Under the pieces are notes generated by a model that saw only the letters and a list, made by a program, of their open reading frames with translations, had not been told where the DNA came from and made no database searches. A program made the position numbers and the translations under genes. DNA of 64,000 nt from Perkinsela sp. CCAP 1560/9 (Eukaryota > Protista > Euglenozoa: Kinetoplastea), in assembly GCA_965644495.1 (NCBI GenBank), contig CBFFSA010000033.1, positions 29,013-93,012 on the forward strand. The letters run 5' to 3'. Positions 1 to 37,762 of the stretch are shown here, one piece after another; position 1 is the first letter of the stretch, and each line of letters opens with the position of its first letter.

Positions 1-553
1 CTCGTTCCTCGCGGAGCGTCAGTGCTCGACAATGCCGTGGTTTGGTCTTTAAAAAACTCGTCAATACTCTTGTACTTGAGCGCCGAATTTCCTTTTCTGC
101 TCGTCTTGGGTTTTGCAGGTTCGAAAAAGGCCTCGCTGGTCAGGCTCGTTTTTGTTTGTGCCTCTTGAATAAGGCTTGTGTTCTGCGGCTCGAGCGCCGA
201 AACCCCTTTTCTGCTCGTCTTCGATACGACCTGCCCATGGGAAAAGAGAGCGAGAGCGTTTTAACCGTCGTCAAAAATCTATCTTCCTCGAGCGCGAAAT
301 CTCCTCTTCAGCTCGGAAGCGATAACCTTGAACCGGTCCGAGTACCTGTCCAAATCGGTTTTGCACGTGGCGCCTGCATAGAAGGAGGTGGACATGGCAA
401 CGGGTATGAAGGCGGGAAAGGTTTTAGGCCCTAAAGGAGGCAGAGATAACAGTATACGCTGAAGTTATGGCGTACGCATTTATAAACCACTTAAAAAAAG
501 ACTTCCAAAAAAAAAAACCTTTTCGTCGTATAGCAATTTTTCTTGTTTTCCTA

Positions 554-3928: not shown

Positions 3929-5472
3929 TACTTTTATTAAGACCTTTACTTTTATTAAGACCTTTACTTTTATTAAGACCTTTACTTTTATTAAGACCTT
4001 TACTTTTATTAAGACGTTTACTTTTATTAAGACCTTTACTTTTATTAAGACCTTTACTTTTATTAAGACCTTTACTTTTATTAAGACCTTTACTTTTATT
4101 AAGACCTTTACTTTTATTAAGACCTTTACTTTTATTAAGACCTTTACTTTTATTAAGACGTTTACTTTTATTAAGACCTTTACTTTTATTAAGACCTTTA
4201 CTTTTATTAAGACCTTTACTTTTATTAAGACCTTTACTTTTATTAAGACCTTTACTTTTATTAAGACCTTTACTTTTATTAAGACCTTTACTTTTATTAA
4301 GACCTTTACTTTTATTAAGACCTTTACTTTTATTAAGACCTTTACTTTTATTAAGACCTTTACTTTTATTAAGACCTTTACTTTTATTAAGACCTTTACT
4401 TTTATTAAGACCTTTACTTTTATTAAGACCTTTACTTTTATTAAGACCTTTGCTTTTATTAAGACCTTTACTTTTATTAAGACCTTTACTTTTATTAAGA
4501 CCTTTACTTTTATTAAGACCTTTACTTTTATTAAGACCTTTACTTTTATTAAGACCTTTACTTTTATTAAGACCTTTACTTTTATTAAGACCTTTACTTT
4601 TATTAAGACCTTTACTTTTATTAAGACCTTTACTTTTATTAAGACCTTTACTTTTATTAAGACCTTTACTTTTATTAAGACCTTTACTTTTATTAAGACC
4701 TTTACTTTTATTAAGACCTTTACTTTTATTAAGACCTTTACTTTTATTAAGACCTTTACTTTTATTAAGACCTTTGCTTTTATTAAGACCTTTACTTTTA
4801 TTAAGACCTTTACTTTTATTAAGACCTTTACTTTTATTAAGACCTTTACTTTTATTAAGACCTTTACTTTTATTAAGACCTTTACTTTTATTAAGACCTT
4901 TACTTTTATTAAGACCTTTACTTTTATTAAGACCTTTACTTTTATTAAGACCTTTACTTTTATTAAGACCTTTACTTTTATTAAGACCTTTACTTTTATT
5001 AAGACCTTTACTTTTATTAGGACCTTTACTTTTATTAAGACCTTTACTTTTATTAAGACCTTTACTTTTATTAAGACCTTTACTTTTATTAAGACCTTTA
5101 CTTTTATTAAGACCTTTACTTTTATTAAGACCTTTACTTTTATTAAGACCTTTACTTTTATTAAGACCTTTACTTTTATTAAGACCTTTACTTTTATTAA
5201 GACCTTTACTTTTATTAAGACCTTTACTTTTATTAGGACCTTTACTTTTATTAAGACCTTTACTTTTATTAAGACCTTTACTTTTATTAAGACCTTTACT
5301 TTTATTAAGACCTTTACTTTTATTAAGACCTTTACTTTTATTAAGACCTTTACTTTTATTAAGACCTTTACTTTTATTAAGACCTTTACTTTTATTAAGA
5401 CCTTTACTTTTATTAAGACCTTTACTTTTATTAAGACCTTTACTTTTATTAAGACCTTTACTTTTATTAAGA
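3926..5472. repeat. 18-bp tandem array (CTTTACTTTTATTAAGAC)n, ~86 copies, inserted after codon 4 of the CRE-like ORF
   Basis: Near-perfect array with six single-base variants (4016, 4160, 4452, 4776, 5020, 5236); the same unit occurs at 38583-38774. Confidence 0.97.
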
Positions 5473-8769: not shown

Positions 8770-9790
8770 TTTTTTTTTTTTAGCTTTATCCAAATAGAAT
8801 AGTCACTAATACAGTCACATAAGAATAAAATCAATTTCACGCGAAAATGCATACAGTTCATACACGTACATAATTATTAACAAACCCTATTCAAATATAA
8901 TCCCTCCTGTTTTTTTTTTTTTTTTTTTGCAATTAATAAGGGGGGAGAAGTATGAATCGCGGCATTGCCTCTATATTTTGACCCAGTAGACGAACCAAGT
9001 AGGTCCATTGGTGGGGGTATACGAGTTGAAAACAAGCAATCAAATTAGCAATTTGAAAATATAACTTTTTTTTTTTTTTTTTACTAAAAACTAGCAAACA
9101 ATTCTACCCGAAATCCACCCCTAATCAAATCACTCCCGCACCAAAACTAAGACCCGTGACGGCACGTCGGTTAGTGACTTGGTACCCCCCCTTGCCCCCC
9201 CCCCTTTTCGCAGAGAAACACCCTCCCCCCCCCCTGCGGCTATTAAATGATTGGGGGGGACCGAATTACTCATCGTTCCCATATCCAAGGAGGGCCGTGT
9301 CAGGGACCGCCGCGGGAAGTCGGAGTACCAGCATCCGAGCCTGTGTCCGCATCAGAGTGATGTTAAGTGACGTCACCAATTGGTGTAAGGCTTCCCCGTT
9401 CGAAAGGGTACCCCCGGAGTATGCCGCACGAGAGACGGAAACCTCCTTGAGGATCGCAAAGGCGCTTGGACTCCACGCTCCATAAGATTCCACGACCATC
9501 GCTCCAAATCGATGGCGTGCGAACTCTGCTTCCTCTCTTTGCTTCTTTTTGTTTTCGGTGGCGTATCGTTCCGCAAAAGACCCCGCCGTCACCCAGTTAG
9601 CATCACGGACTAAGTCCGTATACTTTGGTTGCTGAACATGAGTGACGGCGAAGTCTAATACAAGAGACTGGCCTAGCCCGATTGTAGGGATGAACACGTC
9701 TCCGGGCCTGGTGAGGGCGCCCCCAGGACCCTTGTTGCCCAGACTCACTTCTCTCCGCGGGGTGAAACCGGCCTTTTTACATTCAGAAGT
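8770..9790 (-). mobile_element. 3' part of a distinct REL non-LTR element (REL C-terminus 9266-9790, 3' UTR, several poly(A) tracts)
   Basis: RPGDVF...LVLDFAVT...VESYG REL motifs; joins in frame with 15010-15342 (HNALAAQF/TSECKKAG). Confidence 0.88.
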
Positions 9791-10474
9791 GAAATCCACA
9801 CCGAGGGGCCGCACAGGACATAAAAGAAAATAACTATAAAGATGAAATAATAATTTATTTTCACATGAGTTCACCTATTCATATCATATACATGAAAAGC
9901 AAATTGAAACGTATGTAGCTTCTACATCATCTTGACAAAATAGGCCTTTCAAAACAAACAATATAAATTTATAATATATCACTATGTTAGCGGGTTGCAC
10001 CCGCCAAACCCGGCGGCTATAGGATGGGGGTTTGGTGGGTGGGACAAAAAAACGCGTAAAGGAAAAAAATTCTACAAGTAAGTAATCAGTAAATATGTAA
10101 ATTTTCAGAATACATATTGTAGCTTTTATACATGATTCAATTACAACCCCCTTTCGGGGAAAAGAACAATGAAAATTATAACCCCCTTCCGGGGCATTTG
10201 ACCCGATATTAGCCCCTCGGTTAAATTTCCATGCGTAGACTTCTAGAAATCCACACCGAGGGGCCGCACAGGACATAAAAGAAAATAACTATAAAGATGA
10301 AATAATAATTTATTTTCACATGAGTTCACCTATTCATATCATATACATGAAAAGCAAATTGAAACGTATGTAGCTTCTACATCATCTTGACAAAATAGGT
10401 CTTTCAAAACAAACAATATAAATTTATAATATATCACTATGTTAGCGGGTTGCACCCGCCAAACCCGGCGGCTA
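9791..10474 (-). repeat. Split direct repeats B2 (9791-10019), G-rich spacer, A2 (10043-10245), B1 (10246-10474)
   Basis: Direct sequence comparison; the internal junction TTCTA|GAAAT equals the two element termini joined. Confidence 0.93.
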
Positions 10475-10587
10475 CCTGCCCACACACAAGTCACAATATT
10501 TTCCCGAACACACAGTAATTTTTTTTTTCCGAAAATAACTAGGGAAGGTTAACACAATAATAGATGACCGGTCTATTATCGTGCCCT

Positions 10588-13500
10588 TTACATCACACAC
10601 TTTTCAATCTGTTTAATGTCAACTTCTTTACCCCGACTTATATGATCGGCCGGATTGTTCAACGTAGACACATATCTCGCCTCGACACAAATCCCACGTT
10701 TCTCAGTGTCTCGTATTATTTCTTTCAATTCCTTTGACACTCCTTCTGACGATAATCTCCTGTTCAACGCTGCCTTACAGGAGGTGTTATCCACGAAGAT
10801 ATCCAAGCACGTTCCTTTGGGGGAGTGCATAGCACGTTTGATTCGATAATCTCCTGTTCAACGCTGCCTTACAGGAGGTGTTATCCACGAAGATATCCAA
10901 GCACGTTCCTTTGGGGGAGTGCATAGCAAACTTTTTAATAGCTAAGCGGACCGCCATCGCTTCGGCCCGATTCACTTCATACTTAAAATTTTTCGGCCAT
11001 GCCTCACCAGTAATTAATACCTCCCCAGAATCAAGGTAAATGATGGCCCCCCATCCCTTCGCAGAAGCATCCGTGTATAACTTGTGGTGGTGAGGAACGG
11101 TGTCAGGATGAGGAGGCGGGGGTCGGGGAAGATTGCATATCAATTCATTTCGCCATTCGGTAAGTGTAGAACGAGTAACTACCGGAAGATCAACTGGCTT
11201 GTCGATCAAATACGGACAGCGATTTAATAAGTTGATCCTACGCTGCGCGACTTTCATCGCGAAATAAAAGCGTGGCATATTGAGCCGCAAGACTGCAGAT
11301 CCATACAGAAGACGCCCCACCGCCGCCTCAAGATCACGAAAAGACAATTTATGAAATTTGTCTTTTTGCAGTTTACTGACCACTCTCGGTCCCAGGCAGA
11401 CCGTATGAGTGTCGTGGTCGAAAGCCACCCCATTGAAAACATACTTCAAAGCAGGGGGCTGTCCGGCGTCTTTAAAGAGGCCGTTTGCTTTGGAACACCG
11501 CTCGTCAATAAAGCGAGCGTATTCAACGGCATCGTTCGCTGTCCCCGAAAAACGAACTCCGTCGACGTAAACGTCAGTGGCACCTCTGTGAAACGAGAAA
11601 CGCTCCTGACACACCGACCTCTCGCCGGCAATTGCGGCGGTAACAGTGTGCATGATTTCTGGTGCGCAGCGATGACCCATGGGAAGAACGTTCATCTCGA
11701 AAACTTCGCCCAATGTCGATCGAAATCTAAACTTGGGCCGTGCCTTCAAGGGAATACTAATTTGGTAAAAACCACAAGTGAAGTCGCGCTTCACTGCCAT
11801 AGCATCATGTGCTTTGTGTAGATATTTGGATGGGTGATACAGCGCAACTTCCGGTTCATAATTTAAAAGCCTGTTGTTGTCATCTCGTGTCCAGGATATA
11901 AACCTGCGGCGTTGATTACCTTCATCGTCGGTTTCAACCACTGTAAAGGGGATCATATATTGCATGGATGGTCTTTTGAGTAGGTCCTTCCCCGAAACCT
12001 TGCTTATAACGCCGGCGCCCTCAAGTAGACGTATGTCTTCCTCGGGCAAAGAACCACGTACCGAAGGCTCGGGGTACGGGCCTGTAGGAACCCATAAAAG
12101 TTCATTTAGTACCTTGCGAAAACGTGTGGCTGCCGCAGGATTTAACCATTCCTTCACTTTGTCCAATTTAATCACCGGGATTGACTTTTTCACATGGAGG
12201 GGTAGACTCATATCCTTCGGTCTAGCGAGCCGCGAGCTACGGCGGGCACATATAACGGAGTGCCTACGGAGATAGGGGACTTCGTGAAAACACTTTGTAA
12301 CATGAGAGGTTGTTAAAGTACCGGAAGGAGTGCAGACACTCGTTGTGTCCCGAGGGCCCGTGCCGTTGTAACGCTGTTTGCATTGTATCTGAGCAGTGAT
12401 TCTATGTTCTGGTGTTTTGTTAGGTTTTGAACCTCCTGCATGCGCAAATTTCCGAGAGAGATTTCGTGAAACAGATGAGTGATTGCCCCCCTTTTGATAG
12501 AGTGCGTCCCGTACCCCTGACCGAGTATTGATCGTATTTGATGGTCCATCTCGCGGACTGTCGTGTAACAGAGTCGTTGCCCGGGGTTCATGGTTTGGAT
12601 ATGCTGCGCGAGTTCTGGCGTTCCTGGCCCAGTTACAATGGCGTAAAGGTGTGGTCGAAAAGGGTTTAGGCGTGTGGTCTTTGTGCCCCTCCCCCAATAA
12701 ATTATCACTTCGCAGCTTGTTACACTCACGAACTGTTCTCTTCTTAAATCCGCGGTCTCGGTCCAACGCGCCGCTGCCTTCCAGCATAGGAGGCAACACA
12801 TGCTCTCCTTCGGATTCAAGTGTCGGCGTAGCTTTTGTAGAAGAATGGGGTTGACGGGCTGCATTTGGCGCGTGGGCTCTAGCCCCCCCTGTGCTTGCAG
12901 GGCCTTTATATATAGTTTTAAGGGAGTCGACTCTTCCCCCATTAACTGAAATAAAGTTCGCAAGCCTCCTGCGTAACCCATTCTCGTCGAGCTGGCTAGA
13001 GGCAGCGAATGTAGGAAGAGAACCGCGTTTGTGGAATTTGAAGGAACACCCTTTGCCGCGCAGTACTGCTGCATACGTAGCCAAATTCGCTCCCTGTTGG
13101 CCCATGTGGTCGTGGCCCACATCGGTTCGAGAGCGTCGCTCAGTTGTAGTGTGCGTGGGTCGTTCGGAGGAAGGCGAAGGATGGCTTGGAGAATGGCGTT
13201 GCGGTCTGCGGCGGGTTTTTCTCCTGCGGACTGGTTTAGTGCGCGTATGGGAAGGGACCGACTTCGCGGAGGACGAGTGGAAACAACATGAGGAAGGGGA
13301 GGATTGGAAGAAAGAGGGGGTCGAGGACGCCTCACCGGAGAGTCTCGTCGGGGTAAGCGCGTTTGTAAGGTTGGAGCGGTAGGAGCCCTTTGCCGCCTGA
13401 GGCAAGGGGCACGAGTAATAGGGGTGGGGGGCATTCCCTAGTGGGAACCCCGTGTTGCGCCGGCGTAACGGACGGCGCCGCCCGCCACCCCTCCGCGAAA

Positions 13501-13591
13501 ATCCTGATTCGTCGGATGGGAGGGACGAAACTGGTGCTGGGCCTGAGCCATCTGCGGGCAGTCCGCACGAATGTGGCCCGGCTGGTGACAC
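10588..13591 (-). pseudogene. RT/RNase H ORF whose long N-terminal extension overlaps the YR ORF; RNase H end frameshifted by an 85-bp duplication
   Basis: KRDFTCGFYQ, LPMG, YVDG, YTDAS..GWG, NNPADHISR; duplication 10750-10834/10844-10928 with 9-bp filler. Confidence 0.88.
12313..13434 (-). CDS. Tyrosine recombinase (373 aa), apparently intact
   Basis: ATG start; catalytic-type residues R (AARWTET), K (TKT), HSIKR, H (TKHQ), Y (LRYN). Confidence 0.9.
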   Translation of the reverse strand: MPPTPITRAPCLRRQRAPTAPTLQTRLPRRDSPVRRPRPPLSSNPPLPHVVSTRPPRSRSLPIRALNQSAGEKPAADRNAILQAILRLPPNDPRTLQLSDALEPMWATTTWANRERIWLRMQQYCAAKGVPSNSTNAVLFLHSLPLASSTRMGYAGGLRTLFQLMGEESTPLKLYIKALQAQGGLEPTRQMQPVNPILLQKLRRHLNPKESMCCLLCWKAAARWTETADLRREQFVSVTSCEVIIYWGRGTKTTRLNPFRPHLYAIVTGPGTPELAQHIQTMNPGQRLCYTTVREMDHQIRSILGQGYGTHSIKRGAITHLFHEISLGNLRMQEVQNLTKHQNIESLLRYNANSVTTARALGTQRVSALLPVL

Positions 13592-14742
13592 GAGAAGCAG
13601 AAAGGCCGACGACGGGAGGATCGAACTTGGGGACGACCTCGGAGTTGTTCGTCGAGAACGAGTTGCCCATAACGATCCTTCGGATCATCATCACGATGCA
13701 GTCGCTGTTGCACGCGTTCGACAGCAACACCCGCAGCGGCCCAGTAGAGATTGCGGAGTTCCTCGATTATGAGTTCTGCCACAGCAAGGTTATGTTTCTC
13801 CATCCAACCCTCCGTCAGGCGAGCAGCGTAGATCCATTCGATAAGGATCTTGAATAAACGGTCCCGCTGCGGTGGCGGGTTGAATCGAACCCCTAGCTGC
13901 GGCGCCTCCCGCAGCTCACGGATGAGGTCTCGGGGCTTGAACAAATCCTCCGTGTCGATCCACGGTTGCCACGTAACCGGGTCGTAGGGGGAGAAGCTTT
14001 TGGGGTCTGTAATACGTACTCGTTCAAAGGACGGGATTAAAGATTCCACCGGCTGCCCTCCAGGCATCTTTGCCCGAACACGGACGACCGTCAAATCGTG
14101 ATACGTAATGTCGGGATGGGGAAAGCGGTATGCCGTATTGACATCACCATCCCACTCAGCGACCAATTCTAAGGACACTGGGTCATTTGGGTGCTTCATG
14201 TAAACGTCGCCTATGACTGTCTGTCGAATGTCATCACCTGGTCGAGACCACACTGCCTCGACAGTGACCTGGTATTCTTTGCGAAGAAGATTAATTATCT
14301 TGGTTACAAATTCTTCCTTAGCAGTCTGAGTCAATATTCCACGCGCATTTTGGTTGGATCGAATAGCACGGTCTACATGGTCGAGATTAAGGTCTTCATA
14401 ACGCTGAGGGGAGCGGGAAGGCTCAACTTGGTCAGGGTTGAGCGTGCTCTGCCGCCGTGGGGGAACATCTCCCGAGTTCTGGGGGGCCGTTAGGGGGTCA
14501 GGGTAAGGGCTGGGGTAAGGAGAAGGGTGTACTGTGCGTCGGTTTCGGCCAGAATAGCGCAGCGAAGGAACCGCGAAAGAGTCTACTGGCGAAGCTGGAT
14601 CAGGACGAGGTGGTCGCCCAGCTGGACAAGACAAGGAACGGCGTTTGTCGGGGTCCAAAGGGGAGAGAGGACGTGTTCGCTTAGGGCTGCGGTCTCGCTC
14701 ATGTCCTGGGTTCGCCGGCACGCGAAGTCGCTGGGAACGCAT
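13438..14742 (-). CDS. gag: Gag-like protein (434 aa) with C-terminal CCHC knuckle
   Basis: First ATG after the SL is at 14742; CFSCHQPGHIRADC. Confidence 0.85.
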   Translation of the reverse strand: MRSQRLRVPANPGHERDRSPKRTRPLSPLDPDKRRSLSCPAGRPPRPDPASPVDSFAVPSLRYSGRNRRTVHPSPYPSPYPDPLTAPQNSGDVPPRRQSTLNPDQVEPSRSPQRYEDLNLDHVDRAIRSNQNARGILTQTAKEEFVTKIINLLRKEYQVTVEAVWSRPGDDIRQTVIGDVYMKHPNDPVSLELVAEWDGDVNTAYRFPHPDITYHDLTVVRVRAKMPGGQPVESLIPSFERVRITDPKSFSPYDPVTWQPWIDTEDLFKPRDLIRELREAPQLGVRFNPPPQRDRLFKILIEWIYAARLTEGWMEKHNLAVAELIIEELRNLYWAAAGVAVERVQQRLHRDDDPKDRYGQLVLDEQLRGRPQVRSSRRRPFCFSCHQPGHIRADCPQMAQAQHQFRPSHPTNQDFRGGVAGGAVRYAGATRGSH

Positions 14743-14771
14743 AAACAAAAAACGCGTAAAGGAAAAAGATT

Positions 14772-14808
14772 CAACAAGGTACAGAAACTGTATCTTTATC
14801 GTTAAAGA
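14772..14808 (-). other. Retroposed spliced-leader sequence inside the VIPER-like element
   Basis: TCTTTAACGATAAAGATACAGTTTCTGTACCTTGTTG joined to the same sequence that follows TTGTAG in repeat A. Confidence 0.9.
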
Positions 14809-15009
14809 CAAAAAAACGCGTAAAGGAAAAAGATTCTACAAGTAAGTAATCAGTAAATATGTAAATTTTCAGAATACATATTGTAGCTTTTATACATGAT
14901 TCAATTACAACCCCCTTTCGGGGAAAAGAACAATGAAAATTATAACCCCCTTCCGGGGCATTTGACCCGATATTAGCCCCTCGGTTAAATTTCCATGCGT
15001 AGACTTCTA
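14807..15009 (-). repeat. 5' terminal repeat A1 containing the trans-splice acceptor AG (14836-14837)
   Basis: Matches A2; minus strand reads TTACTTACTTGTAG|AATCTTTTTCC. Confidence 0.9.
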
Positions 15010-15342
15010 AAACTGTGCCGCTAGTGCGTTGTGGCGTGCGATTATACCATGCCCGCTTTTGCACCCCAGAGCGTGGTCACCCTCGGGATCTAGCGGTAAC
15101 GTGCATTTTTCCATAGGACAAGGCCGGGACGCTGGATAGATTGGGTCCCCTAGCCACCAGCGTGTGAGGGTGCGAAACTCCGTCGGTGTGAAAGCCAGAC
15201 CGGTTTTCTTGGAGGGGATCACAAAAGCCCATTCTGAGGCTCCTTCTCCTGTTTCTGATATCCATCTGGCCCGTGTGCGAAGGTCAGCTTTCGCAAATGC
15301 CTCGTGAAATTCCTGGTTGGCGATGGCGTGGCTAAGGTCGCG
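15010..15342 (-). pseudogene. Zinc-knuckle/RHN part of the REL element split by the VIPER-like insertion
   Basis: CPMEKC...DHALGC...ARHN; in frame with 9266-9790. Confidence 0.85.
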
Positions 15343-18300
15343 TTTTTTTTTTTTTTTTTTTTTTGATATTAACCTCGCTTCCCAAAGAAAGGGTCCTAAC
15401 AAAAGAAAGGGTCCTAATAGTTCACGTTTTGAAATTTAGCCGTAGAAACCAATTTGAACAAACTAATAATACTATAACATTCATTGTCGTTTTTTTTTTC
15501 CGTTCCTTTAGATATTATGTATATAATAATACATATAGGCATTGAAAAAAACGAAACTATGTTGATACATTTGGCTCAAATGCTGTACCTGCTGCTGCCT
15601 TCCGGGGATAAGTGGTTCCGCAACTGGGCGTACACTTCCGTCCCATTCAGTTCCTGAAGTAGGAGCTTGAACTCCATTTCAGTTGCTCGACGATTTAAGA
15701 GTGCCGCGTCGGATAGGACATGCAACAGAGATCTCGTATTTTGATGAAGAGAGCCGCAGGACAGCACTGGGATGCACTGAAATGCGAAGTCGGGAATTTT
15801 TCCGGATGTCACATATGTATCCCGTTTCCGCTTGATTGCATCTGTAAGAAGCTGGGAGCAAGATTTCGCTTGATTGGAGTTCGATAGCTCGTGCACCACA
15901 GTTAGATCATAAAATATTTCCCCGGTTGACCAATATATCACCAAATCAGGCCCTGAGCGAAACAGCTGACGTCCGGCACATGTTTTGTCATGAATCATTT
16001 TGTTGCTTGGAAACACTTTATTCTTGCAAATTCCGCATTGCCAAGTCGAAAAAGATCGCGGTTCTTTCTCGCATTGTATACCGGCCTTTTGTGCCAAATC
16101 GAAGATATACTTAACCAGCCGATTGTGCTTCATTGTGGCATTAAGCCCTGTACATTGGACGCATCCGGGGATGTGCTGCAAAGCTGTTTTGTTGTCGAGT
16201 AACATACGACAGCCGGGGCACAGCAGCGATTTCGGGAGTCGAGGATGAGGCATCCCAAGGCGTGTCATGATTGCAATCTGAAATGCACGCGTGGGTACAA
16301 ATTTAGCATTAGACTGTAACCAGTCATAGCTTCCTTTCCGTGTCGTGGCATTTAATATTGTGGCTAGCTTGGGATCGTGATCCTTTAAAGCCTCGTATGC
16401 TTTCTGGTGCAATTGCGCGGCTGTTGTTACTTCATCGATTGGGGCGACCACTGCTGTTTGACTCATTCCATTATCCATGATAGCGGATACGTTACTCACA
16501 TTGCCCGCCCGAGCAGAAATTGAGTTTTTGCGCTCTAGAGCTAGGTAACGAGAAGTTTCGTATGACGCCGCACGAATACTATGACATGATGTCAGACCGA
16601 GGCCTCCTTTCTTTAGCGGCAGCCGAGCCAATTCGATTTGCTCTTTGGTCATTTCTCCCAACCACTGGTGCAGCACTTTTTCGACGTTGTTGTCGAAACT
16701 GAGAGAGACCGCGTCGGTTAACGTTGGCTCGTGCACTCTTATGGCGTATTGATGCCTCACATTCATGCTTTTGGAAAGTAGCAAAAGTGAGACATTGTTG
16801 GCGCCCATAAGTTTTAATCGGCGAAAGGCTTCGGTATTCCTGACAAGCTGCTGAAACAAACCCGACTTTACAGATTCATCTTCTCCAAGGTGTGCCCCAA
16901 GGATCTTTATAGAATCGTACGCAGCCTTGACCCCTTCATTTGCAAGCTGTTCTGGAATCGGGATTTTTTCCTGTCCACCGAACCACACGCATTTTCCAGG
17001 AGCAAGTTCAATGTTGTGAGCATTCACCATTTCTTGGAGCCTTACAAATGCTTTGGCCAATGATTGTGAGTTTTTCGAAGCCATGTTCACGTCATCAATA
17101 AATGCATATATTTCGATGTCGGGAAACTCTTGTTTCAGAATCTCCAATAGTGGCTGCAGGAAGGCGCAGTAGTATAGAGATGCCAGCGGGGAACCTTGCC
17201 GGAAACCACATGTGCTGGGAATGACTCCGAATAGCGTTCCATCGGATCCGTAATACAGTAGCTCTGAGGGTTGGCCGTATTCAGCGTGAAAGATCCGTTG
17301 AAACGGGCGTAGTGTACCACAAGCAAATACGTGTTTGGCGATATCCGCCCTATTCGGGGAGTTGAAGGCGTTTTTGGCGTCAATGGAAAGAATGACGTGT
17401 CCAGACTTAAAACGCTCATGCAGTCTATGAACGATTTTTTCGCATCCTGCCTTTGACGAAACGCCGTGTTGCAGTGGTGCAAAAAGAGGGCCCAAAGTGT
17501 GTTCGTAGCGCTGGAGCAATATAACGCCGGCAAGCTTCATAAATATCTCGCCCATTGCCACTGGTCTGACTCCTCCGTTGGATTTAGGAATGGCTACGAG
17601 CCGTGCTCGGTTTAATCGAAACAAAACGCTGTGATCCACGAATCCGTTGATTAGATCCGATATCATATGGGCAAGATTAGTGCATGAGATCTCATCATCG
17701 AGCATGAGTTGCACAATCCCGTCTGTCATTCCAGTTGGGCCAGGGTTTACGCCTTTTGCGAGTCGCTTCCCTGCTTTCCGTAGCTCCTCCGTCATTATCC
17801 CGCTAATTATCGGCGCATCCTCCGGCAAAGAAATTTCGTATTGTCTTTGCGGATGTAAGGCGGCAAGCTTGTCAAGGGTCTCTTCATCCGTTAGTTGCTT
17901 TGGTGTAAAGGTCTGATCCAAGACCTTAGCCGCCTTGGAAGTACATCCATCCAATACTAGCCTTGTCGCTCGTTTGATGGCTCGTGTATCGCTCAGTGTC
18001 TCCTCTTTTCGCTCACCGTCATCGGGCTCCCGTAACGGGCGCCGTCTTCGCCTTTTTCCACTGTTTTCTCGAACAGTCGCTAGGGATAACTTAATGGCTG
18101 ATAGCAAACGGTGCCATATTTTTGTTCTTTGCGTGTGATCGGAATTTATATACTCCTGGACGATGTTCCTCAGCACCACGACAACACACGGAGCGAGGTC
18201 AGGGCTTATTGAACGTAGCGTGGGTATTGGTAACAAATCCACTGATGAATCATCTTTGGCTTTTTCTGGAAAGTTCATCTGATGATTCTCCAGAAACGCA

Positions 18301-19074
18301 TCCCTTTGCACAGTAGTATCGATCGCTGGCGGCGCTTGATGCCACGCTAGTTTATAGATCCGTACGTCCTCTTGTGGAGGTAAAACCCCGGAAAATTGTT
18401 CCCCAACTTTGTGACCAACAACGCCCCGATACGAGATAGATAACTTACCAAATCCTCCACGCTTACTATGTGTTCGAGTGACTTTGCCTATTGAGATGTT
18501 AAGCGCACCTTGTTTGTTAAATGTCCAGGCCACTGTACACATTGCGCCCGGTTTGATTTGCTTCGAATGCGTCCAAATCTCATCCGGCGAGGCCGGAAAT
18601 TGTGACTCGGGCGTTACATTCTTCATCAGGTCAAAGGATTTATTCTCCTCTGTGCTTGGGTCGATTCCGATAAACATGATCGCTGAATTTTTCTCGTTCT
18701 GTGACTTCGTTGCATTTGGCTCCCGCTCGGGTAATTCCGCATCGATTTTGGGACTTGATGGAGACCCCAACTGAGAGAGAAGCTGATCACGTTGGTTCGT
18801 TTTTTTCATGGGAGTTTCGGGAGTGTTGCACTCAAAAAACTGACGTGGCTCATCTGACGGGGAAGACGGCTCTTCAGAAAAAACATCAAAATTGTGAACG
18901 TCGTGCACGTAACCATTACCGATCCATCTGTATCCTTCAAATCGAGGGTCTTTGGGATCTGGATGCATCTCGATGTTGGTTTCATTGGCGTCATTTGCTA
19001 CCGTCGGCGGAGTATTCGTGTTCACTTGAGAATTCCCGTGATGTGATTTATGACATGTAACCGCTGTTCCATTT
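15343..19074 (-). mobile_element. CRE-like RT-REL element, 5'-truncated, with poly(A) tail
   Basis: Poly(T) 15343-15364; 3' UTR with two 18-mer units (15380-15418); long open ORF. Confidence 0.92.
15576..19074 (-). CDS. RT-REL polyprotein (~1165 codons, open, true start uncertain)
   Basis: IDAKNAFN, GFRQGSPLA, AFIDDV, CPGC..HIPGCVQC, KHN, SGPD..YD. Confidence 0.88.
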
Positions 19075-20325
19075 GTGAGAGTACACCACCCCATAGTCTC
19101 CGAAAATCTAGCTAAACTATTCGATCACGAGGTAGAAGAGGTGTTGAATTCGTGGTTTGGAACGCTATCTCAGGATCAGATAACTCAGTTACGTTTACCG
19201 GTTAAGAAAGGCGGGCTGGGCCTGACGGCTTGTCTCCCAATTCGGTGTGCAGCCTTTGAGTCCTCTTGGTATTCAGTTTTCGAGCGCCCAATTAATCTTT
19301 CAGCTCAAGTCGAACACCAAGGAGACCAGACGCACGCCATTTTGCAGTCCGACACCGACACCAGCGTGCCAACAGCAACAACCGACACCAGCGTTCCTAT
19401 CGACGAAGATACGGCGGCGGCAGCTCTTCACACGAAAGCGTGGGACCTTTTGTCTTCTTCGAAGTCAGACTCGGTTGCCATCTTACAAGCAGTCTCATAT
19501 AAGGGCAACGCAGAATGGGTCATGTCTAATGCTAAGTTTGTTCCCTCGCGCCTTTTTTCGCTTGCTTTAATGCCGCGACTCGGAATCGCGCATCCTCTAC
19601 TGCCAAAACAGTTGCTCTGCCCCGGGTGCCGGATTCTGCTAGATTCGAAAGCCATGCTCGCGCACATACCTGGCTGTTCGAAATGCCCCGGTCTCAACGC
19701 CACAGCGAAGCATAACTCTTTAGTAAATTTTCTCTACGAGTTGTGTTTAAAAGCTGGGATTCCCTGCGAAAAAGAGCCGCGTAATTTCGCAACGTTTTCG
19801 TGCACACAATGCAACGAAAAAGTGGATCCTGATTACAGACGGACGCATGGAAAAGTTTGCGGAGGCCGTTCTTTCCGCAGATCGGGTCCCGATCTTGTAG
19901 TTTTTTGGAATTCCGGCGAGATATTCTATGATTTCACCGTGATTCACGAGTTAGCGCCCTCTAATCTCGGAACAAAATGTGGCAAACTTTTTCGCGACGC
20001 GATCAAACGTAAACAAGACACCTATGTTCGCTCGGGTTTGATATCAGAGGAAACGTTTCGGTGCGTGCCAGTGCTGTCAGGCGGGTCTCTACACGAAAAT
20101 ACGAAATCTCTTCTCAACGCCCTAGCAGACGCTTGTTGCCTGCCTCGAAAACAGACGCAGATGGAGTTTCAACTCTGTCTTCAAGAGTTGAATGGAGCTG
20201 TTGTATATTCGCAGCTGAGATCCTTTCTTGAGAAGGACAAACGGGGTACAGACTATGCGATATGAAGGAACAATGGCAGGAATGTGTTTCGTTTTTTTTT
20301 GTTTTTGTTTTGATTTGAATAGATT
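19075..20325 (+). mobile_element. 5'-truncated CRE-like fragment (RT thumb plus REL, stop at 20265)
   Basis: LPVKKGGLGL, CPGC..HIPGCSKC, KHN, SGPDL..YDF. Confidence 0.88.
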
Positions 20326-23685: not shown

Positions 23686-26600
23686 TCAACAACAGAATGT
23701 ACTATTTTTGAAGCTTTGACTTGAAGCAAAAGCTAATCATAGTCGTAGACCTCCAACCCATTTTTCAGCCTGAATATATTGCCGCAATTGAGAAACTACT
23801 GCGTATGCAGAATATTTCTCTAACTCAAGCTGAAAGGCTTTTCGTGTTGGCGTATAATCTAGACCTGCCCTCTTTGCCAATGTTTTTAGTAGCTGTTTAG
23901 TCTCCTCGTGCAAGACCCCACAATCAGTAATCGCAATGCAACGGAAACTTTCGGGATCTAAGCCTTTCTCCTTCATGTATTTATTATTCTTTCTGTCTTG
24001 GGCACTCTGGAGCAAGTCATTGCTACTTTGCTTTCGGTAGCTACTGCAACACGTATGAACTACGGTTAAATCGTATAAAATTTCACCAACGTCGGGCCAC
24101 AAGATCGCAAGGTCTGGTCCGGATCTGATTCTACGAGCTCGGCATGGGTGTTGTTCTGCTGCTTCTGGGGAAATTGAACATTTGCACTTAGTGCAGAAGA
24201 ATGACGTGTGAATTCGTGGCTCGATTGCACAAGGGAGACTGGCTTTGGAACACAGATCGGAAAGATATCGCACCAAATGAGAGTGTTTGCGTGTACAGTT
24301 CATTCCAGCGCATCGTGAGCAACCGGCTACGTGAGGAATGATTTTGCATGCCGACTCTACAATTCCACATCCCGGGCATGTGATATTGCATGGAGCGTTA
24401 CTGAGTTCGATTCCGAGGCGCATCATAAGAGTGTACCGAAAGAGGTAGGGATTTACGTAATTGTTCGTCGAGTCTAAATGTGTGCTCGCTTCTTTTGTGC
24501 GTTTCGTGATATCTTGAAATCTGGGATTCTCGTTCAAATCCATTGCTACCTTTTCATGTTCACTCTTCATATTCTTTGACAGCTGGGTACGTACCGCCTG
24601 AGCTTTCGATCCAGGACTACTTACTTGTTTCTTGGCTGAGCTATCTACTGGAGCATTAGAGGGCTGATTTCGCTCTTCAATAGATTTGCGTGAGGCTTCG
24701 AAAAAGTAACGTTGCTTTAGAACCGTTGAGGTAATTCCAAGGCCTCCCATTTTACATGGAAGGGCGGCGAGTTTGAGGGCTTCACTGTCAGCACCACACC
24801 ATTTCTTTAGAATCTTGTGTATTTCTTCATCAAAGGTCTGTGCTAGGAGAATAGAGGCTCCAGGTTTGTGGACTCGCAGATGGTAGTCGTGGCGCGGTAA
24901 TGTGCATCTCTTGAGAATCGCGAGCGATAAGTTGCTTGGGCCCATAATCTTGAGTCTTCGGAAAAGACATTTATGTTTCTCCAGCTTTTCCAACAGTTTT
25001 CGCTCCACTGCTTTATTGTGTCCTATGTACGCCCCAAGAACTTTGATGGAATCCACGCAGTCTTCCACCCCAAGCTCTCGAAGTGACATGCCTCGGTGGT
25101 TAGTGGTGTTATTGCCTTGGAAAAGTTCGCACTTGCGAGAATTTATTTCGAGGTTTAATTCACTTGTCAGTTCTTTAAAATGAAGAAAAGCAACTTCCAA
25201 TGATGATTCATTCTTAGAACTCATGGTAACATCGTCTTGGTAGGCTCGAATGGTGACGTCTGGATAGAGTTTCGCAATTTTCTTCAACGGACCTTGCAGC
25301 ACGGCGCAGAAATATACTGACGAGAGTGCTGATCCCTGTCGGACTCCTGATGAGCTTTCAATTACGGAATGCAAGGTATTGTTCGCGAAGAAAAGAAGTT
25401 CCGATGATTGCCCGTACTCAAAATAAAACATTCGCATGAAATATTTGAATACTGGATACTCAAGAAGAGCTTGCTCTATTGATGTGCGATGTTTCTGTAC
25501 CTTGTTGTTTTATTTTTATTTTTACTCGTATGAACACGCAAAACGCCGAACAAATTATGAAGAGGGGATCAACGCTCGATAAGCCAAAGAAAACCCCCCG
25601 TGTGAGAGTTATTATGAGTGCAAAGGAATTATCGCCGAACTGGGCCGACCACGAGGTACATAGCAACTACCGACGGCCAAGGATAAAATTTTCTGATGCA
25701 AGGCCGACCTCACAAGAGTCCGAGAATGATTCCGATGAGGAGAGAGATTCATCCAAACATCCTGAAGATTGCGAAGGCGCCTCCGATGATACCACAGGCG
25801 AAGAATCTGATGTGATGTCGGTGGATGAGGAAGTGACGTCGATGGATGGGGAAGTGGGGCAACGCAAAAACGAAGAATTTCCGAAGGCTCCAGATCACAT
25901 CAACACCATTATCCATGAATGGGGCAAAGGAACGACGTGCGAACTGAGATGGGGATTCAAAAAAGAGCAGAAATATGCCTCAAAAGGAGTAGTGGTGAAG
26001 AGGACTGTCCGAAAAGGTATTGTAAAGCTGAAGGTGGAATACAAGCCAAGCGACGGAGACAATGGACCCTCTGGTTTTATCTACCTTCCTCCATCTGCAA
26101 AAGTGAAAATTTGGTCCATTAAGGCACTGTGTCTAAATAAAGTAAAAAGCGTCGATGTGTCAATGGAAAACACTGGAAATTCAGAGAACAAGGAGGAGCG
26201 AGGCATTGAGGGAACATCTGATTTGGAACCGCTGCCAAAGATGGCACAAATTGATCCAACGTTTGCCGTCCATGTAATCGCGATTTTTCGTTCCATTATT
26301 AAAGCGTACCCGAAGGCTCAGACAGAAGCAGAAAGAACTGTTATCTGGCACAAACTCCTCGATACACCACGGGACTCTTTGGCCACAGTCCGTCTAAACT
26401 ACCTACGGCGCCAGAGCTCCGTACAGCGTCGAGGGAGACGTGAGTGGGAAACTATCGATACGAACATTACCGAGGAAGAACGACTTGTACAAGAAGTAGA
26501 CAAACGATCAATTCGAAATGCATTGCAAGCAGCAAAGGCAGGAAATCTTGGAAAAGCTACCCGCATACTCGACAATGTTTACAAGGACTCTGCTCTTCCA

Positions 26601-30983: not shown

Positions 30984-31015
30984 CAACAAGGTACAGAAAC
31001 TGTATCTTTATCGTT
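30984..31015 (-). other. Retroposed spliced leader (32 nt)
   Basis: AACGATAAAGATACAGTTTCTGTACCTTGTTG lying inside the TSD. Confidence 0.9.
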
Positions 31016-32080
31016 ATTCCAACCGATCCAAAGAGGCATATTACAAAAGAATGCATGTGAGTCCATTGTACATGAACTTTTGGAAGAGCATGAAGCTGGA
31101 GCCACAATTTTGACGATTGACTTCAAGAATGCATACAATACGCCACAACGTACGGCAATAGAAGAAGCGCTCCTTCAATACCCGGTATTCAAACACTTTA
31201 TGCGAATGTTCTATTTTGAATATGGTCAACCATCGGAACTTTTATTTTTCGCCAACGACTCATTACATTCCGTGATCGAAAGCTCGTCTGGGGTCCGTCA
31301 AGGATCAGCACTCTCTTCGGTTTATTTTTGCGCACTGCTACAAGGTCCTTTGAAAGAAATTGCGAAGCTCTATCCAGAGGTTACTATCAGAGCCTACCAG
31401 GACGATGTGACGATGAGCTCCAAAAATGAGTCATCTTTGGAAGTTGCGTTCCTTCACCTCAAAGAACTAGCAAGTGGTCTGAATCTTGAAATTAATTCCC
31501 GTAAATGCGAAGTATTCCAAGGCTACAGTTCAACGAATAATCGAGGGATGGATCTCAAGGAACTTGGGGTGGAAGACTGTGTGGATTCCATCAAGGTCCT
31601 AGGAGCATACATCGGGCATAATAAAGCCGTTGAACGAAAGCTCTTGGAGAAGTTAGGGAAACATAAATGTTTATTTCGAAGACTTCGCGCTATGGGTCCC
31701 AGCAACTTGTCACTAGCGATTCTCAAGCGATGTACCATACCCCGTCATGATTACCACCTTCGAGTCCATAAACCTGGAGCTTCGTTTCTTCTTGCCCAGG
31801 TGTTCGACGAGGAAATCCATGAGATCCTAAAGAAATGGTGTGGTGCAGATAGTGAAGCACTTAAACTCTCTGCCCTCCCATGTAAAATGGGAGGTCTAGG
31901 AATCACCTCAACCGTTCTAAAGCAACGCTACTTTTTCGAAGCGTCCCTAAAATCTATTGATGAGCGATCGAAACCCATTAATGCTCCGGTAGATAAGGGA
32001 GGCAAGAAACAAGCCGACAGCACACGAACGAATTCACAAGCTGCACGCACCCAGCTAAGAAAGAGCATGAAGAATGAACA

Positions 32081-36001: not shown

Positions 36002-37762
36002 GGGTAGGGGGGACCTTCGATGAGTACTCATCGAAAGTCTACAACTTTCCGTGAGTCTCATCGAGAGTCTACAACTTTCGATGAGTACTCATCGAAGCGT
36101 TTTTGAGCGACCCTAATAGAGATTTTCGAGATTTTTTTATTACTCACCGAAGCGTTTGTGGCAAACAAACTGAAGCGTTTGCATAAAACAAATTCACAAT
36201 CCTTCGGAAGGGGTGGACACAGGTTCCCAGTGCGCTACCCGCGTGCTGGAGCGTGCGGGGCGCCAAAAGATATTATTATGTCCCATGGTCAAAAGAGAAT
36301 CCGAACTCCTAATCGATAATAGAAGCTAAGTCAGACTGCATAATTTACAAAAAGAAAACATATGATCTACTCATAGTCTGATGGCCATCAACGTAACGGA
36401 AACATGATACCTTAAAAGTTTACGAAAAGAATTGTACAATGGAAATTTTGATTTCTGAGAATTATATTTACGTTAGTTGGCCGACGGGCATTGTACGTTT
36501 GTTATTCATAAACTAGTTTATATAGTGACACAAAGCATTATACAGTGAACTGGTAATAGAGCGCGTTTTTATCCTTTGAAACTTTTTGGCGGGTGGTCCC
36601 CGCGTGGACACCCGTTCGAGAAAGGGAGGGAAGGGAGTTCTCTCCAGGAAAAAGTTCATGAGGTATATAAAATAGATTTGATACTTACTTCGCGAAGTTG
36701 ATATTACAGTACTGGTGAAGATAATGTCTTTTACTCTGTTGTCCATGATGGATGTTATATTTCGGTAGCTCTGTAGTTCTACAGATTAAACATTACAGTT
36801 TACATACGCTTACTATATCTGATTGACTATATGTTTTTCTTCCGGAAGTGCAATTCACGTTAAAACCGGCAAAATAGCTGAAGAATCCGTCCTACAAAAA
36901 ACAACAGGGCTACGCTCACAGTTGGGCCTTGCCTCTGGACAATCCTGCGGAAGGGGTAGACGGGTTGGGGGTACGTTCGTTGAGTTCTCAACGAACGGAA
37001 ATTTACGGTGGAAGTCAAGGACTTTTGTGGAACACCCAAGATTTTTTTTTGATTTTCCTTTTCCGTGCGTTCAGTATCCTACACTTCACTACATACGTTG
37101 ACAACGCCTCCGTAGCGAAAACTACGAAATTCAGTGAGCTTCGCAAATTGCTTCCCACTAACGACGCACAGGGGAATCCTACGCGGGGTACGGCTCAGGC
37201 CCGCTCACGCGGGCCCTCGCCGTTTCGCGGCCGCGCGCACCCCCGCTCACGCGGGGGCCCCCGCGCGGCCAAAATGGGTACTAAAATTTGTTATCAAGGT
37301 AGTTGAGCTTCGCAAATTGCTTCCCACGAATCTAGAGAGAAGCACACGTACAATAATCTTTAACGATAAAGATACAGTTTCCGTACCTTGTTGATTATTT
37401 ACTTTTTTTTACCTTTCATGGGAGTGTTCACACGCTCCCAAGCAAAAGAATCAGGAGTAGTCCTGAGATTTTGCCGCTCCCTCCTGCCCGCCGGAAAAAG
37501 AAGGCCGTGATGCCAACTCCTCCTCCGCCCGCCGTGCCAATATCCACCACCTCCGCATGGAGCGCACGGGTCGCCAAAAAATATTATTATGTCCCAGGGC
37601 TACGCTCACAGTTGGCCCTTCGCAAAAAATTGATAAAATACGAAAAATTGAAAAAGTCAAAAACACCTTCGATGAGTACTCATCGAAAGTCTACAACTTT
37701 CCGTGAGACTCATCGAAAGTCTACAACTTACGATGAGTACTCATCGAAGGTCCCCCCTAGCC
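36002..37762. mobile_element. Non-autonomous Merlin/IS1016-like DNA transposon (TIR GGSTAGGGGGGACCTTCGATGAGTACTCATCG, 8-bp TSD GAAAAACA)
   Basis: TSD 35994-36001 / 37763-37770; GG-starting TIRs; no transposase recognised, so the superfamily is inferred from ends only. Confidence 0.8.
37355..37393 (+). other. Full 39-nt spliced-leader-like sequence (one mismatch) inside the DNA transposon
   Basis: AATCTTTAACGATAAAGATACAGTTTCCGTACCTTGTTG followed by a T-rich stretch and ATG at 37418; no GT donor follows. Confidence 0.82.

What the first reader, a model, noticed from the sequence alone, without database searches (positions are those of the whole stretch)
14740..14850. YR retrotransposon copied from a trans-spliced RNA: acceptor AG and SL-joined product side by side
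Seen (minus strand): repeat A1 contains TTGTAG|AATCTTTTTCCTTTACGCG(T)7GTC, immediately followed by SL...TTGTTG|AATCTTTTTCCTTTACGCG(T)6GTTTATG. The SL replaces everything upstream of the AG, exactly as trans-splicing would. The end of A1 matches A2 (T7, GTC) rather than the gag-proximal copy (T6, GTT). Inference: RT copied the mRNA through the SL, then jumped to the A2/spacer boundary to rebuild A1. The split repeats therefore restore the splice acceptor that trans-splicing removes, which explains how such elements stay expressible in a polycistronic genome.
Basis: partly seen in the sequence, partly recalled or inferred. Interest (0 to 1): 0.85.

Follow-up and report, generated by a model that had tools for sequence, protein, structure and literature searches.

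The report
Spliced-leader scar in a recombinase retrotransposon
A young jumping gene of the VIPER/TATE type in a kinetoplastid-like protist carries a DNA copy of the cell's own spliced leader, joined exactly at a splice acceptor; this indicates that it was copied from trans-spliced mRNA, and related copies show that such an element's 5' repeat can be rebuilt from its internal repeat.

Summary
On the minus strand, repeat A1 is followed by a 35-37 nt spliced-leader (SL) relic (14808/14806..14772). A 27-nt second copy of the A1 tail follows (14771..14745), then the gag ATG (14742). The SL joins exactly where the A1 copy has AG (14837-14836).

The SL is genuine. The same 38 nt precede a GT donor in tandem SL RNA genes next to a 5S rRNA gene.

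The element (15009..9791) has gag, tyrosine recombinase and RT/RNase H, split direct repeats A1...B1-A2-spacer-B2, and no target duplication. That is the VIPER/TATE architecture.

The event is recurrent:
- Two of 7 informative copies of this >99% identical family carry the SL, with different upstream joints and no shared SNP.
- Four of 23 loci of sister families carry the SL, each with its own joint.
- One sister copy carries A + spacer + the first 25 nt of B ahead of gag, so its 5' repeat was copied from A2-spacer-B2.

"GTC" is not diagnostic. The claim that split repeats exist to restore the acceptor is not shown. No RNA data were available.

The scan noted the same pattern before on another piece of this genome (s1-381664). 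I found no published report.

The parts
9791..15009 (-). Whole YR retrotransposon (5,219 bp), from TAGAAG... to ...GGATTTC. It is inserted without target duplication into a LINE-like sequence.
   Evidence: Repeats. Ten paralogous empty sites read CACAGTTT|ACTTCTG. Junctions.
14808..15009 (-). Repeat A1 (about 202 nt). It contains a pyrimidine-rich tract and the AG acceptor at 14837-14836. Its last 28 nt (14835..14808) form the 'A tail'.
   Evidence: The canonical copies run from this AG straight into the gag leader.
14772..14807 (-). Spliced-leader relic. It matches 36 nt of the 38-nt SL exon and lacks the first two A. The boundary with A1 is ambiguous by 1-3 nt.
   Evidence: It is identical to the exon of the SL RNA genes at C1:661.3k.
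14745..14771 (-). Second, gag-proximal copy of the A tail (27 nt, T6). It is the 5' UTR as it would stand in the trans-spliced mRNA.
13438..14742 (-). gag-like ORF (434 aa from the ATG) with a CCHC zinc knuckle.
   Evidence: More than 97 related gag matches in the genome.
12313..13434 (-). Tyrosine recombinase ORF (373 aa). Conserved residues are R223, K252, H311-x-x-x-R315, H341 and Y350.
   Evidence: A profile of 56 homologues hits Cre recombinase at E 1.5e-5. Twelve of the 56 homologues match Pfam Phage_integrase.
10787..12184 (-). RT / RNase H part of the long overlapping ORF (10787..13591). Motif C reads YVDG.
   Evidence: Weak Pfam RVT_1 and RT_RNaseH hits. Homologues at 52-59% identity carry PF00078 or PF17917. 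YVDG is shared with a 72%-identical family.
10246..10474 (-). Repeat B1 (229 nt).
   Evidence: 100% identical to B2.
10044..10245 (-). Repeat A2, abutting B1. The B1|A2 joint is the presumed circle junction. Its tail has T7, like A1.
10020..10043 (-). Spacer starting CCCACCCACCAA. This motif is conserved behind A2 in three families. In this family and one sister family the spacer pairs with the first 25 nt or so of B2 to form a hairpin (10041..9998).
   Evidence: Folds: -22.1 kcal/mol, z -3.5, 0 of 200 shuffles as good. Not supported in a third family.
9791..10019 (-). Repeat B2 (229 nt), the 3' end of the element.

Best explanation
This is a recently active VIPER/TATE-type tyrosine-recombinase retrotransposon of a kinetoplastid-type protist.

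Proposed sequence of events:
1. Its transcript is trans-spliced at the AG that lies 28 nt before the end of repeat A.
2. In the round of reverse transcription that made this copy, the enzyme copied that mature mRNA through the short leader and into the spliced leader, almost to the cap.
3. The growing minus-strand DNA then switched template, with only 1-3 nt of microhomology, to the end of an A repeat. The source was most likely A2 of a full-length RNA, just before the spacer. It then copied A leftwards.
4. The result is a complete A1, then the SL, then the leader again.

Normally the switch happens inside the 28-nt homology, or an unspliced RNA is used, and no scar is left.

What is shown:
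- the anatomy;
- the identity of the SL;
- the exact AG/SL correspondence;
- the recurrence with different joints;
- one relative whose 5' repeat was copied from A2-spacer-B2;
- integration without target duplication.

What is inferred:
- the order of the steps;
- that A2, rather than A1 of an unspliced RNA, was the source for this particular copy;
- that the intermediate is a circle integrated by the recombinase.
For: (1) SL identity. The 38-nt exon plus a GTATGAG donor occurs in tandem 297-bp genes beside a 5S rRNA gene. There are 452 exact copies of the SL 3' 23-mer in 21 Mb, but only 4 are intact genes.

(2) Canonical copies. Five copies of the same family, more than 99% identical, read straight from the AG through the 28-nt tail into gag. 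The SL copy therefore equals canonical plus an insertion of SL and tail.

(3) A second SL-bearing copy. It lies at C17:228.3k (L040) and has the same SL/leader joint but a different upstream joint, in the T-run, with the SL starting at AACG. Over 3.48 kb no SNP unites the two copies. The window copy groups with L045 instead, by 5 shared SNPs.

(4) Sister families (gag about 70% identical). Four of 23 loci carry SL relics joined at their own AG or another acceptor, each with a different upstream joint:
- L055: at the end of A;
- L060: at the end of A plus 6 extra nt;
- L065: at a 5-nt TAAAG microhomology in mid-SL;
- L058: about 105 nt into A at a TCT microhomology, with the acceptor deleted.

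(5) L075 has full A + spacer + B(1..25), then a 15-nt repeat of the A tail, then gag. That 5' repeat was therefore templated by A2-spacer-B2.

(6) In the window copy, A1 and A2 share T7. The gag-proximal tail and the A2 of other copies have T6.

(7) Element class. The ORF order is gag-YR-RT/RH and the repeats are split direct repeats. Ten empty paralogous sites and the L044 tandem-repeat target show no target duplication. This matches published VIPER/TATE anatomy (PMC12278014).
Against: - There is no RNA evidence. No RNA run is on record for this organism among the runs served. The contigs laid on a canonical copy showed no SL loose end among the listed ones.
- The source of the rebuilt A1 in this copy rests on a homopolymer length. 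The C of 'GTC' is equally the SL's own base. A1 and A2 differ at one tail base.
- Five of 7 informative copies have no scar, so SL-carrying RNA may be an occasional rather than the normal template.
- Five genomic loci show A ending at about position 75 followed by poly(A). This hints that mature mRNAs may end inside A2 and would then lack the A2 tail. The acceptor template would then have to be a longer RNA.
- The reverse transcriptase has YVDG instead of YxDD. The motif is conserved across families.
Confidence: 0.78

Rival explanations
1. A patch made at the DNA level. A break at the A1/gag boundary of a copy that was already integrated was repaired with a cDNA (or the RNA) of the element's own trans-spliced mRNA. 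The SL + leader segment would then have been inserted in place, without a transposition cycle.
For: The product is the same: canonical sequence plus an insertion of SL and tail. Microhomology joints are also typical of end joining.
Against: [quoted passage not shown] L075 carries spacer + B(1..25), which an mRNA 5' end cannot supply. In L058 the SL joins deep inside A with loss of 66 nt or so, as expected from a switch of template.
Confidence: 0.1
2. A single ancient capture. One ancestor of the family acquired the SL once. The SL-bearing copies inherited it, and the different upstream joints arose by later slippage deletions in the T-rich joint. Canonical copies lost it by switching at the gag-proximal tail.
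For: Going from the window joint (T7-G-TCTTT-AACG) to the L040 joint (T5-AACG) could be an 8-nt slippage deletion between T runs. An SL-bearing RNA could in principle pass the relic on.
Against: No SNP unites the two SL copies in 3.48 kb. The tree is star-like, and the window copy's nearest relative is L045. The sister families have four further, clearly different joints, so recurrence is established anyway.
Confidence: 0.08
3. The SL-like stretch is a remnant of an SL RNA gene, or of a CRE/SLACS-type insertion site, not a copy of spliced mRNA.
For: The genome holds many partial SL pieces followed by GTAC... sequences that begin near SL position 12. Relatives of such elements target SL genes (PMC12278014).
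Against: Here the SL is followed by the element's own leader, not by the GT donor or intron. It is flanked by a 27-28 nt duplication, and it joins exactly at the position of an AG.
Confidence: 0.02
4. Chance resemblance or assembly artefact.
For: The public contigs laid did not visibly bridge the SL joint. They break at repeats.
Against: A 36-nt identity to the SL exon and a 27-nt flanking duplication cannot be chance. Two separate contigs carry SL-bearing copies, and sister families show the same layout.
Confidence: 0.02

Closest known systems
VIPER and TATE retrotransposons of trypanosomatids and Bodo saltans (DIRS order; Lorenzi 2006; Ribeiro 2019, PMC6681497; PMC12278014)
   Same: The ORF order is gag-like, then tyrosine recombinase, then overlapping RT/RNase H. 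The repeats are split direct repeats: A1 at the 5' end and B1-A2-B2 at the 3' end. There is no target-site duplication. The host is kinetoplastid-type.
   Different: A spliced-leader relic lies inside the element and the A tail is duplicated. The two papers I searched have no passage on an SL relic in the element: PMC6681497 has no hit for 'spliced' and only a background sentence on trans-splicing, and in PMC12278014 the one 'spliced leader' passage concerns CRE insertion in SL genes. I did not place this element on a VIPER/TATE tree. Its RT motif C is YVDG.
SL relics in dinoflagellate retrogenes ('mRNA recycling'; PMC5585692, PMC6050394, PMC12014239)
   Same: A DNA copy of the spliced leader at the 5' end of a sequence marks it as reverse-transcribed from mature trans-spliced mRNA. 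Stacked or truncated relics occur in both.
   Different: Those are host genes retroposed in trans. Here the relic sits inside an autonomous recombinase retrotransposon, downstream of a rebuilt terminal repeat. It therefore reports on the element's own replication.
Model of DIRS/Ngaro/PAT replication, in which ends missing from the RNA are restored from the internal B1-A2 copy and a closed circle is integrated by the recombinase (Cappello 1985; Poulter and Goodwin 2005; cited from my own knowledge)
   Same: The 5' repeat is rebuilt from an internal repeat by template switching. The B1|A2 joint equals the presumed circle junction. Integration leaves no duplication.
   Different: Here the RNA 5' end is set by trans-splicing, not by a promoter. 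The aberrant products (SL scars, and the spacer + B insert in L075) give sequence-level footprints of the switch, which the model lacked.
L1Tc / ingi and CRE/SLACS/CZAR non-LTR elements of trypanosomatids (PMC5814959, PMC12278014)
   Same: Retrotransposons of the same host group. CRE-clade elements are associated with SL sequences.
   Different: L1Tc RNAs start at an internal promoter and lack an SL (PMC5814959). CRE elements insert into SL RNA genes rather than carrying an SL copied from mRNA.

Membership tests
VIPER/TATE-type YR retrotransposon (DIRS order) | Tyrosine recombinase ORF | tested here: met
   There is no direct Pfam hit. A profile of 56 homologues hits Cre recombinase at E 1.5e-5. 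Twelve of the 56 homologues match PF00589. H311, G316, H341 and Y350 are invariant, and R223 and K252 nearly so.
VIPER/TATE-type YR retrotransposon (DIRS order) | Reverse transcriptase and RNase H | tested here: met
   Direct Pfam hits are below cut-off: RVT_1 at E 0.07 and RT_RNaseH at E 0.0027. Homologues at 52-59% identity carry PF00078 or PF17917. Motif C is YVDG, not YxDD.
VIPER/TATE-type YR retrotransposon (DIRS order) | ORF order gag-like, YR, RT/RH with overlap | tested here: met
   ORF map. The gag zinc knuckle scores 20.7 bits against a cut-off of 20.8.
VIPER/TATE-type YR retrotransposon (DIRS order) | Split direct repeats A1 ... B1-A2-B2 | tested here: met
   The number of extra A-spacer-B units varies among copies: 0, 1 or 2.
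VIPER/TATE-type YR retrotransposon (DIRS order) | No target-site duplication | tested here: met
   Ten empty paralogous sites. The L044 insertion lies in a tandem repeat.
VIPER/TATE-type YR retrotransposon (DIRS order) | Phylogenetic placement within the VIPER or the TATE clade | not tested
   No named reference sequences were available in the tools.
cDNA copy of a trans-spliced mRNA (SL relic, as in dinoflagellate retrogenes) | Sequence identical to the organism's SL exon | tested here: met
   36 of 38 nt are identical to the exon of the tandem SL RNA genes.
cDNA copy of a trans-spliced mRNA (SL relic, as in dinoflagellate retrogenes) | SL joined at a position that is an AG acceptor in the unspliced sequence | tested here: met
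   A1, A2 and five canonical copies have AG immediately before the joined base.
cDNA copy of a trans-spliced mRNA (SL relic, as in dinoflagellate retrogenes) | SL-joined transcript seen in RNA | not testable with these tools
   No RNA run was served for this organism. The laid runs were contigs of unknown kind.
CRE/SLACS/CZAR site-specific insertion in an SL RNA gene | SL exon interrupted near position 11/12, with SL intron sequence on the far side | tested here: not met
   The relic is nearly full length and is followed by the element's own leader, not by the GTATGAG intron.

The most novel reading that the evidence does not exclude
The aberrant joints map the ends of replication intermediates of a split-repeat YR retrotransposon.

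Three SL scars (the window copy, L055 and L060) start exactly at the last base of A. The L075 insert stops exactly at base 25 of B. These two points are the 5' and 3' feet of a stable hairpin formed by the conserved spacer (CCCACCCACCAA...) and the G-rich start of B2.

The hairpin, or the motif alone, would then be the place where minus-strand synthesis starts or where an RNase H-resistant RNA end is left. It would play a PBS/PPT-like role that has never been defined for DIRS-order elements.
Probability: 0.3. Interest if true: 0.8.

Novelty: new variant of a known kind. Interest (0 to 1): 0.62.

Why it matters
How tyrosine-recombinase retrotransposons with split repeats replicate has been a paper model for decades, with almost no molecular footprints. 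These copies supply such footprints in the genome itself:
- They indicate that a trans-spliced, capped mRNA can serve as the template.
- They show where the reverse transcriptase leaves that template.
- In a sister family they show that the 5' repeat is copied from the internal A2-spacer-B2 region.

They also give a DNA-level record of a trans-splice acceptor inside a mobile element of a polycistronic genome.

Together with the hundreds of other SL relics here, they show that retro-copying of SL-carrying RNA is not confined to dinoflagellates, where it is known for host genes.

Tried and rejected
- RNA evidence. The look-up of sequencing runs found four holders of unknown kind from one study and one possible RNA run with none of the words. 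Read laying on a canonical copy (L043:300-2300, 2,001 letters) gave only contigs that break at repeats. No SL loose end was listed, and no 63-nt insertion variant was reported. This neither supports nor refutes the reading.
- Structure of the recombinase. The AlphaFold model was poor (pLDDT 42), so I ran no fold search and used profile searches instead.
- Direct Pfam search of the recombinase gave nothing. PDB phmmer of the RT part gave nothing. Rfam has no model that matched the SL RNA gene; only the 5S gene beside it matched.
The A2 regions of L055, L058, L060 and L065 were therefore not seen.
- 'GTC marks A2' is rejected as diagnostic.
- I considered that relics starting TCTTT instead of ACTTT reflect misreading of a modified cap-proximal base. 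The counts are 149 against 57, but they are not independent events, and only 4 SL genes are assembled. This is left open.
- The hairpin behind A2 is significant in two families but not in a third that keeps the CCCACCCACCAA motif. I therefore keep it as a hypothesis only.
- Literature searches on SL relics and YR or retrotransposon template switching found no report of this.

Full report
**1. What is there**

I read the minus strand of 14400-15300.
- Repeat A1 ends with a pyrimidine-rich stretch and an AG at 14837-14836.
- It is followed by 28 nt (14835..14808, with a run of 7 T).
- Next comes a stretch that matches the spliced leader (SL), ending ...CCTTGTTG at 14772.
- Then the same 27 nt again (14771..14745, with 6 T).
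- Then TT and the ATG of the first ORF (14742).

The repeat search and the 3' region give the full anatomy on the minus strand:

| Part | Coordinates |
|---|---|
| A1 | 15009..14808 |
| SL relic | up to 14772 |
| duplicated tail | 14771..14745 |
| gag | 14742..13438 |
| recombinase ORF | 13434..12313 |
| long overlapping ORF (RT/RNase H part from about 12184) | 13591..10787 |
| B1 | 10474..10246 |
| A2 | 10245..10044 |
| 24-nt spacer | 10043..10020 |
| B2 | 10019..9791 |

**2. Is it the organism's spliced leader?**

- The 23-nt 3' part of the sequence occurs 452 times in the 21-Mb assembly.
- Only four copies are followed by GTATGAG, and two of these are 297 bp apart in tandem on contig 1.
- That unit reads AACTTTAACG...CCTTGTTG|GTATGAG... 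and lies beside a 5S rRNA gene. From my own knowledge, this linkage is known in kinetoplastids.
- The core CAGTTTCTGTAC is the conserved kinetoplastid/diplonemid SL core (also from my own knowledge).
- The window alone holds five relics, each followed by a short leader and an ATG of a retroelement ORF.

I take the SL identity as settled. The relic here has 36 of the 38 nt.

**3. What kind of element is it?**

- gag has a CCHC knuckle at the Pfam cut-off.
- The 373-aa ORF has no direct Pfam hit, and its AlphaFold model was too poor to use.
- A full HMMER search found 476 relatives of that ORF.
- A 56-sequence profile of them hits Cre recombinase at E 1.5e-5.
- Twelve of the 56 members match Phage_integrase.
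- The alignment keeps R223, K252, H311, H341 and Y350.
- The RT/RNase H part has only sub-threshold Pfam hits. Homologues at 52-59% identity carry RVT_1 or RT_RNaseH.
- Motif C is YVDG in this family and in a 72%-identical one.
- Ten paralogous copies of the interrupted LINE-like host sequence read CACAGTTT|ACTTCTG. The element is inserted exactly there, without duplication or loss.
- A copy inside a tandem repeat (L044) shows the same.

gag-YR-RT/RH, split direct repeats and no target duplication are the published anatomy of VIPER and TATE (PMC12278014; PMC6681497). I did not place the element on a tree.

**4. Other copies of the same family**

A DNA search found nine places at 97-100% identity. 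Seven show the A/gag boundary.

Five are canonical. The AG is followed by the 28-nt tail, which runs straight into the gag leader with no SL.

Two carry the SL:
- the window copy;
- L040 (contig 17, 228.3 kb).

Both have the same SL/leader joint, but their upstream joints differ. In the window copy, A runs to its last bases and the SL starts at (T)CTTTAACG. In L040, A stops in the T-run and the SL starts at AACG.

Over 3.48 kb of internal sequence the copies differ by 8-25 sites in a star-like pattern. Five SNPs unite the window copy with L045, a 5'-truncated copy. None unites it with L040.

Two independent captures are the simplest reading. A single capture followed by slippage in the T-rich joint cannot be excluded for this family alone.

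**5. Sister families settle the recurrence**

The gag protein finds at least 97 matches. Among 23 loci of families with about 70% identical gag, four carry SL relics, each with its own upstream joint.

| Locus | Upstream joint |
|---|---|
| L060 | full A, 6 extra nt, SL, then a repeat of the family's own tail after its AG |
| L055 | full A, then the SL joined to another acceptor |
| L065 | switch at a 5-nt TAAAG microhomology between the A tail and the middle of the SL |
| L058 | SL joins about 105 nt into A at a TCT microhomology, deleting the acceptor |

A fifth copy, L075, has no SL. It has full A, the spacer and the first 25 nt of B, then a 15-nt repeat of the A tail and gag. That arrangement can only come from copying A2-spacer-B2. 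It is the best evidence that the 5' repeat is rebuilt from the internal repeat.

**6. Mechanism**

The pattern fits reverse transcription of a trans-spliced element mRNA, followed by a template switch to the A2 region.
- If the switch occurs within the 28-nt homology, or the template is unspliced, the copy is canonical.
- If the enzyme runs into the SL, a microhomology jump leaves A-SL-tail.

For the window copy itself, the evidence that A2 was the source is the shared T7 of A1 and A2, against T6 in the gag-proximal tail and in the A2 of other copies. That evidence is weak, because it is a homopolymer length. 'GTC' is not informative, because its C, and probably its T as well, can belong to the SL.

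This goes beyond the data:
- split repeats are the published anatomy of the whole VIPER/TATE group (PMC12278014), and to my knowledge also occur in YR elements of hosts without trans-splicing;
- most copies bear no scar;
- five genomic loci with A ending at about position 75 plus poly(A) suggest that mature mRNAs may end inside A2.

**7. A lead beyond the finding**

- The spacer begins CCCACCCACCAA in three families.
- In this family and in one sister family, the spacer and the first 25 nt or so of B2 fold into a hairpin. The energies are -22.1 and -28.8 kcal/mol, with z -3.5 and -2.9, and 0 of 200 shuffles as good. The same hairpin is the centroid in 123-nt contexts.
- Three SL scars begin at the base just before this hairpin. 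The L075 insert ends at its last paired base.
- A third family keeps the motif but not a significant hairpin.

I report this as a hypothesis: the site may mark an end of a replication intermediate.

**8. Limits**

- No RNA run was available.
- The one read-laying run (L043:300-2300) returned contigs only and showed neither the SL joint nor its absence.

**9. Earlier notes of this scan**

Other readers and agents noted SL-headed retroelements in this genome. One note records the same 'repeat A, SL, duplicated leader' pattern in another YR element on another piece of the genome (s1-381664). Notes on my window mention the TSD-free integration and the YxDG motif. I checked both independently.

**10. 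Literature**

Searches found SL relics only for dinoflagellate retrogenes. In the two VIPER/TATE papers I searched, no passage describes an SL relic. L1Tc RNAs are described as lacking an SL (PMC5814959).

**Verdict**

The adaptive claim is unsupported. The element is a new member of a known group, and it shows an undescribed and mechanistically informative variant feature.

Noticed in passing
window 25492-25507 (+), 30984-31016 (-), 37378-37393 with upstream (+), 40916-40931 (-): Four further SL relics, full or cut down to the last 16 nt. Each is followed by a short leader and the ATG of another retroelement ORF. Two of the encoded proteins start alike (MNTQNAEQ / MNTENAAQ).
   Followed up: partly
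L042 (C1:1511600-1518600), L043, L044 compared with window 9791-10474: Copies of the same family differ in the number of extra A-spacer-B units at the 3' end: none (L043, L044), one (window, L040) or two (L042). This fits unequal recombination or repeated switching, but I did not resolve it.
   Followed up: partly
G000 C8:31956, C22:120331, C34:28935, C40:44349, C44:971: Five loci where repeat A stops at about position 75 and is followed by at least 8 A. The stop lies about 100 nt upstream of the AG acceptor, as expected if it is the coupled polyadenylation site. They may be retro-copies of polyadenylated RNA. I could not fetch them.
   Followed up: partly
genome-wide: 149 SL relics begin TCTTTAACG and 57 begin ACTTTAACG. 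The tandem SL genes on contig 1 read ACTTTAACG. This is either an unassembled SL gene variant or misreading next to the cap. It is unexplained.
   Followed up: partly
L001, L004, L005, L007, L018, L024, L025, L026: A dispersed class in which the SL from about position 12 onward is followed by GTAC and a conserved sequence of about 45 nt (...CCCGGNAACGGGCATA), unlike the SL gene intron. It may be the head of another repeat family or an SL-gene-derived element.
   Followed up: no
window 11558-11569 and L041: RT motif C reads YVDG instead of YxDD in two families about 72% identical. The element into which L040 inserted reads YIDG at the insertion point.
   Followed up: partly
window about 4000-5400: A long tandem array with an 18-nt period and 27% G+C, in 99% identical units.
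   Followed up: no
window 10750-10928: A 94-nt tandem duplication near the 3' end of the RT/RNase H ORF. Overlapping BLAST alignments suggest that the other copies carry one more unit here than the window copy; I did not count the units.
   Followed up: no
window 15013-19094 (-) and 9266-9790 (-): The element sits inside the 3' part of a LINE-like element (ORF with RVT_1 at 15576..19094). At least ten uninterrupted paralogues of this host element exist in the genome.
   Followed up: partly
L002 2225-2343: A 5S rRNA gene lies within about 400 bp of the tandem SL RNA genes.
   Followed up: yes
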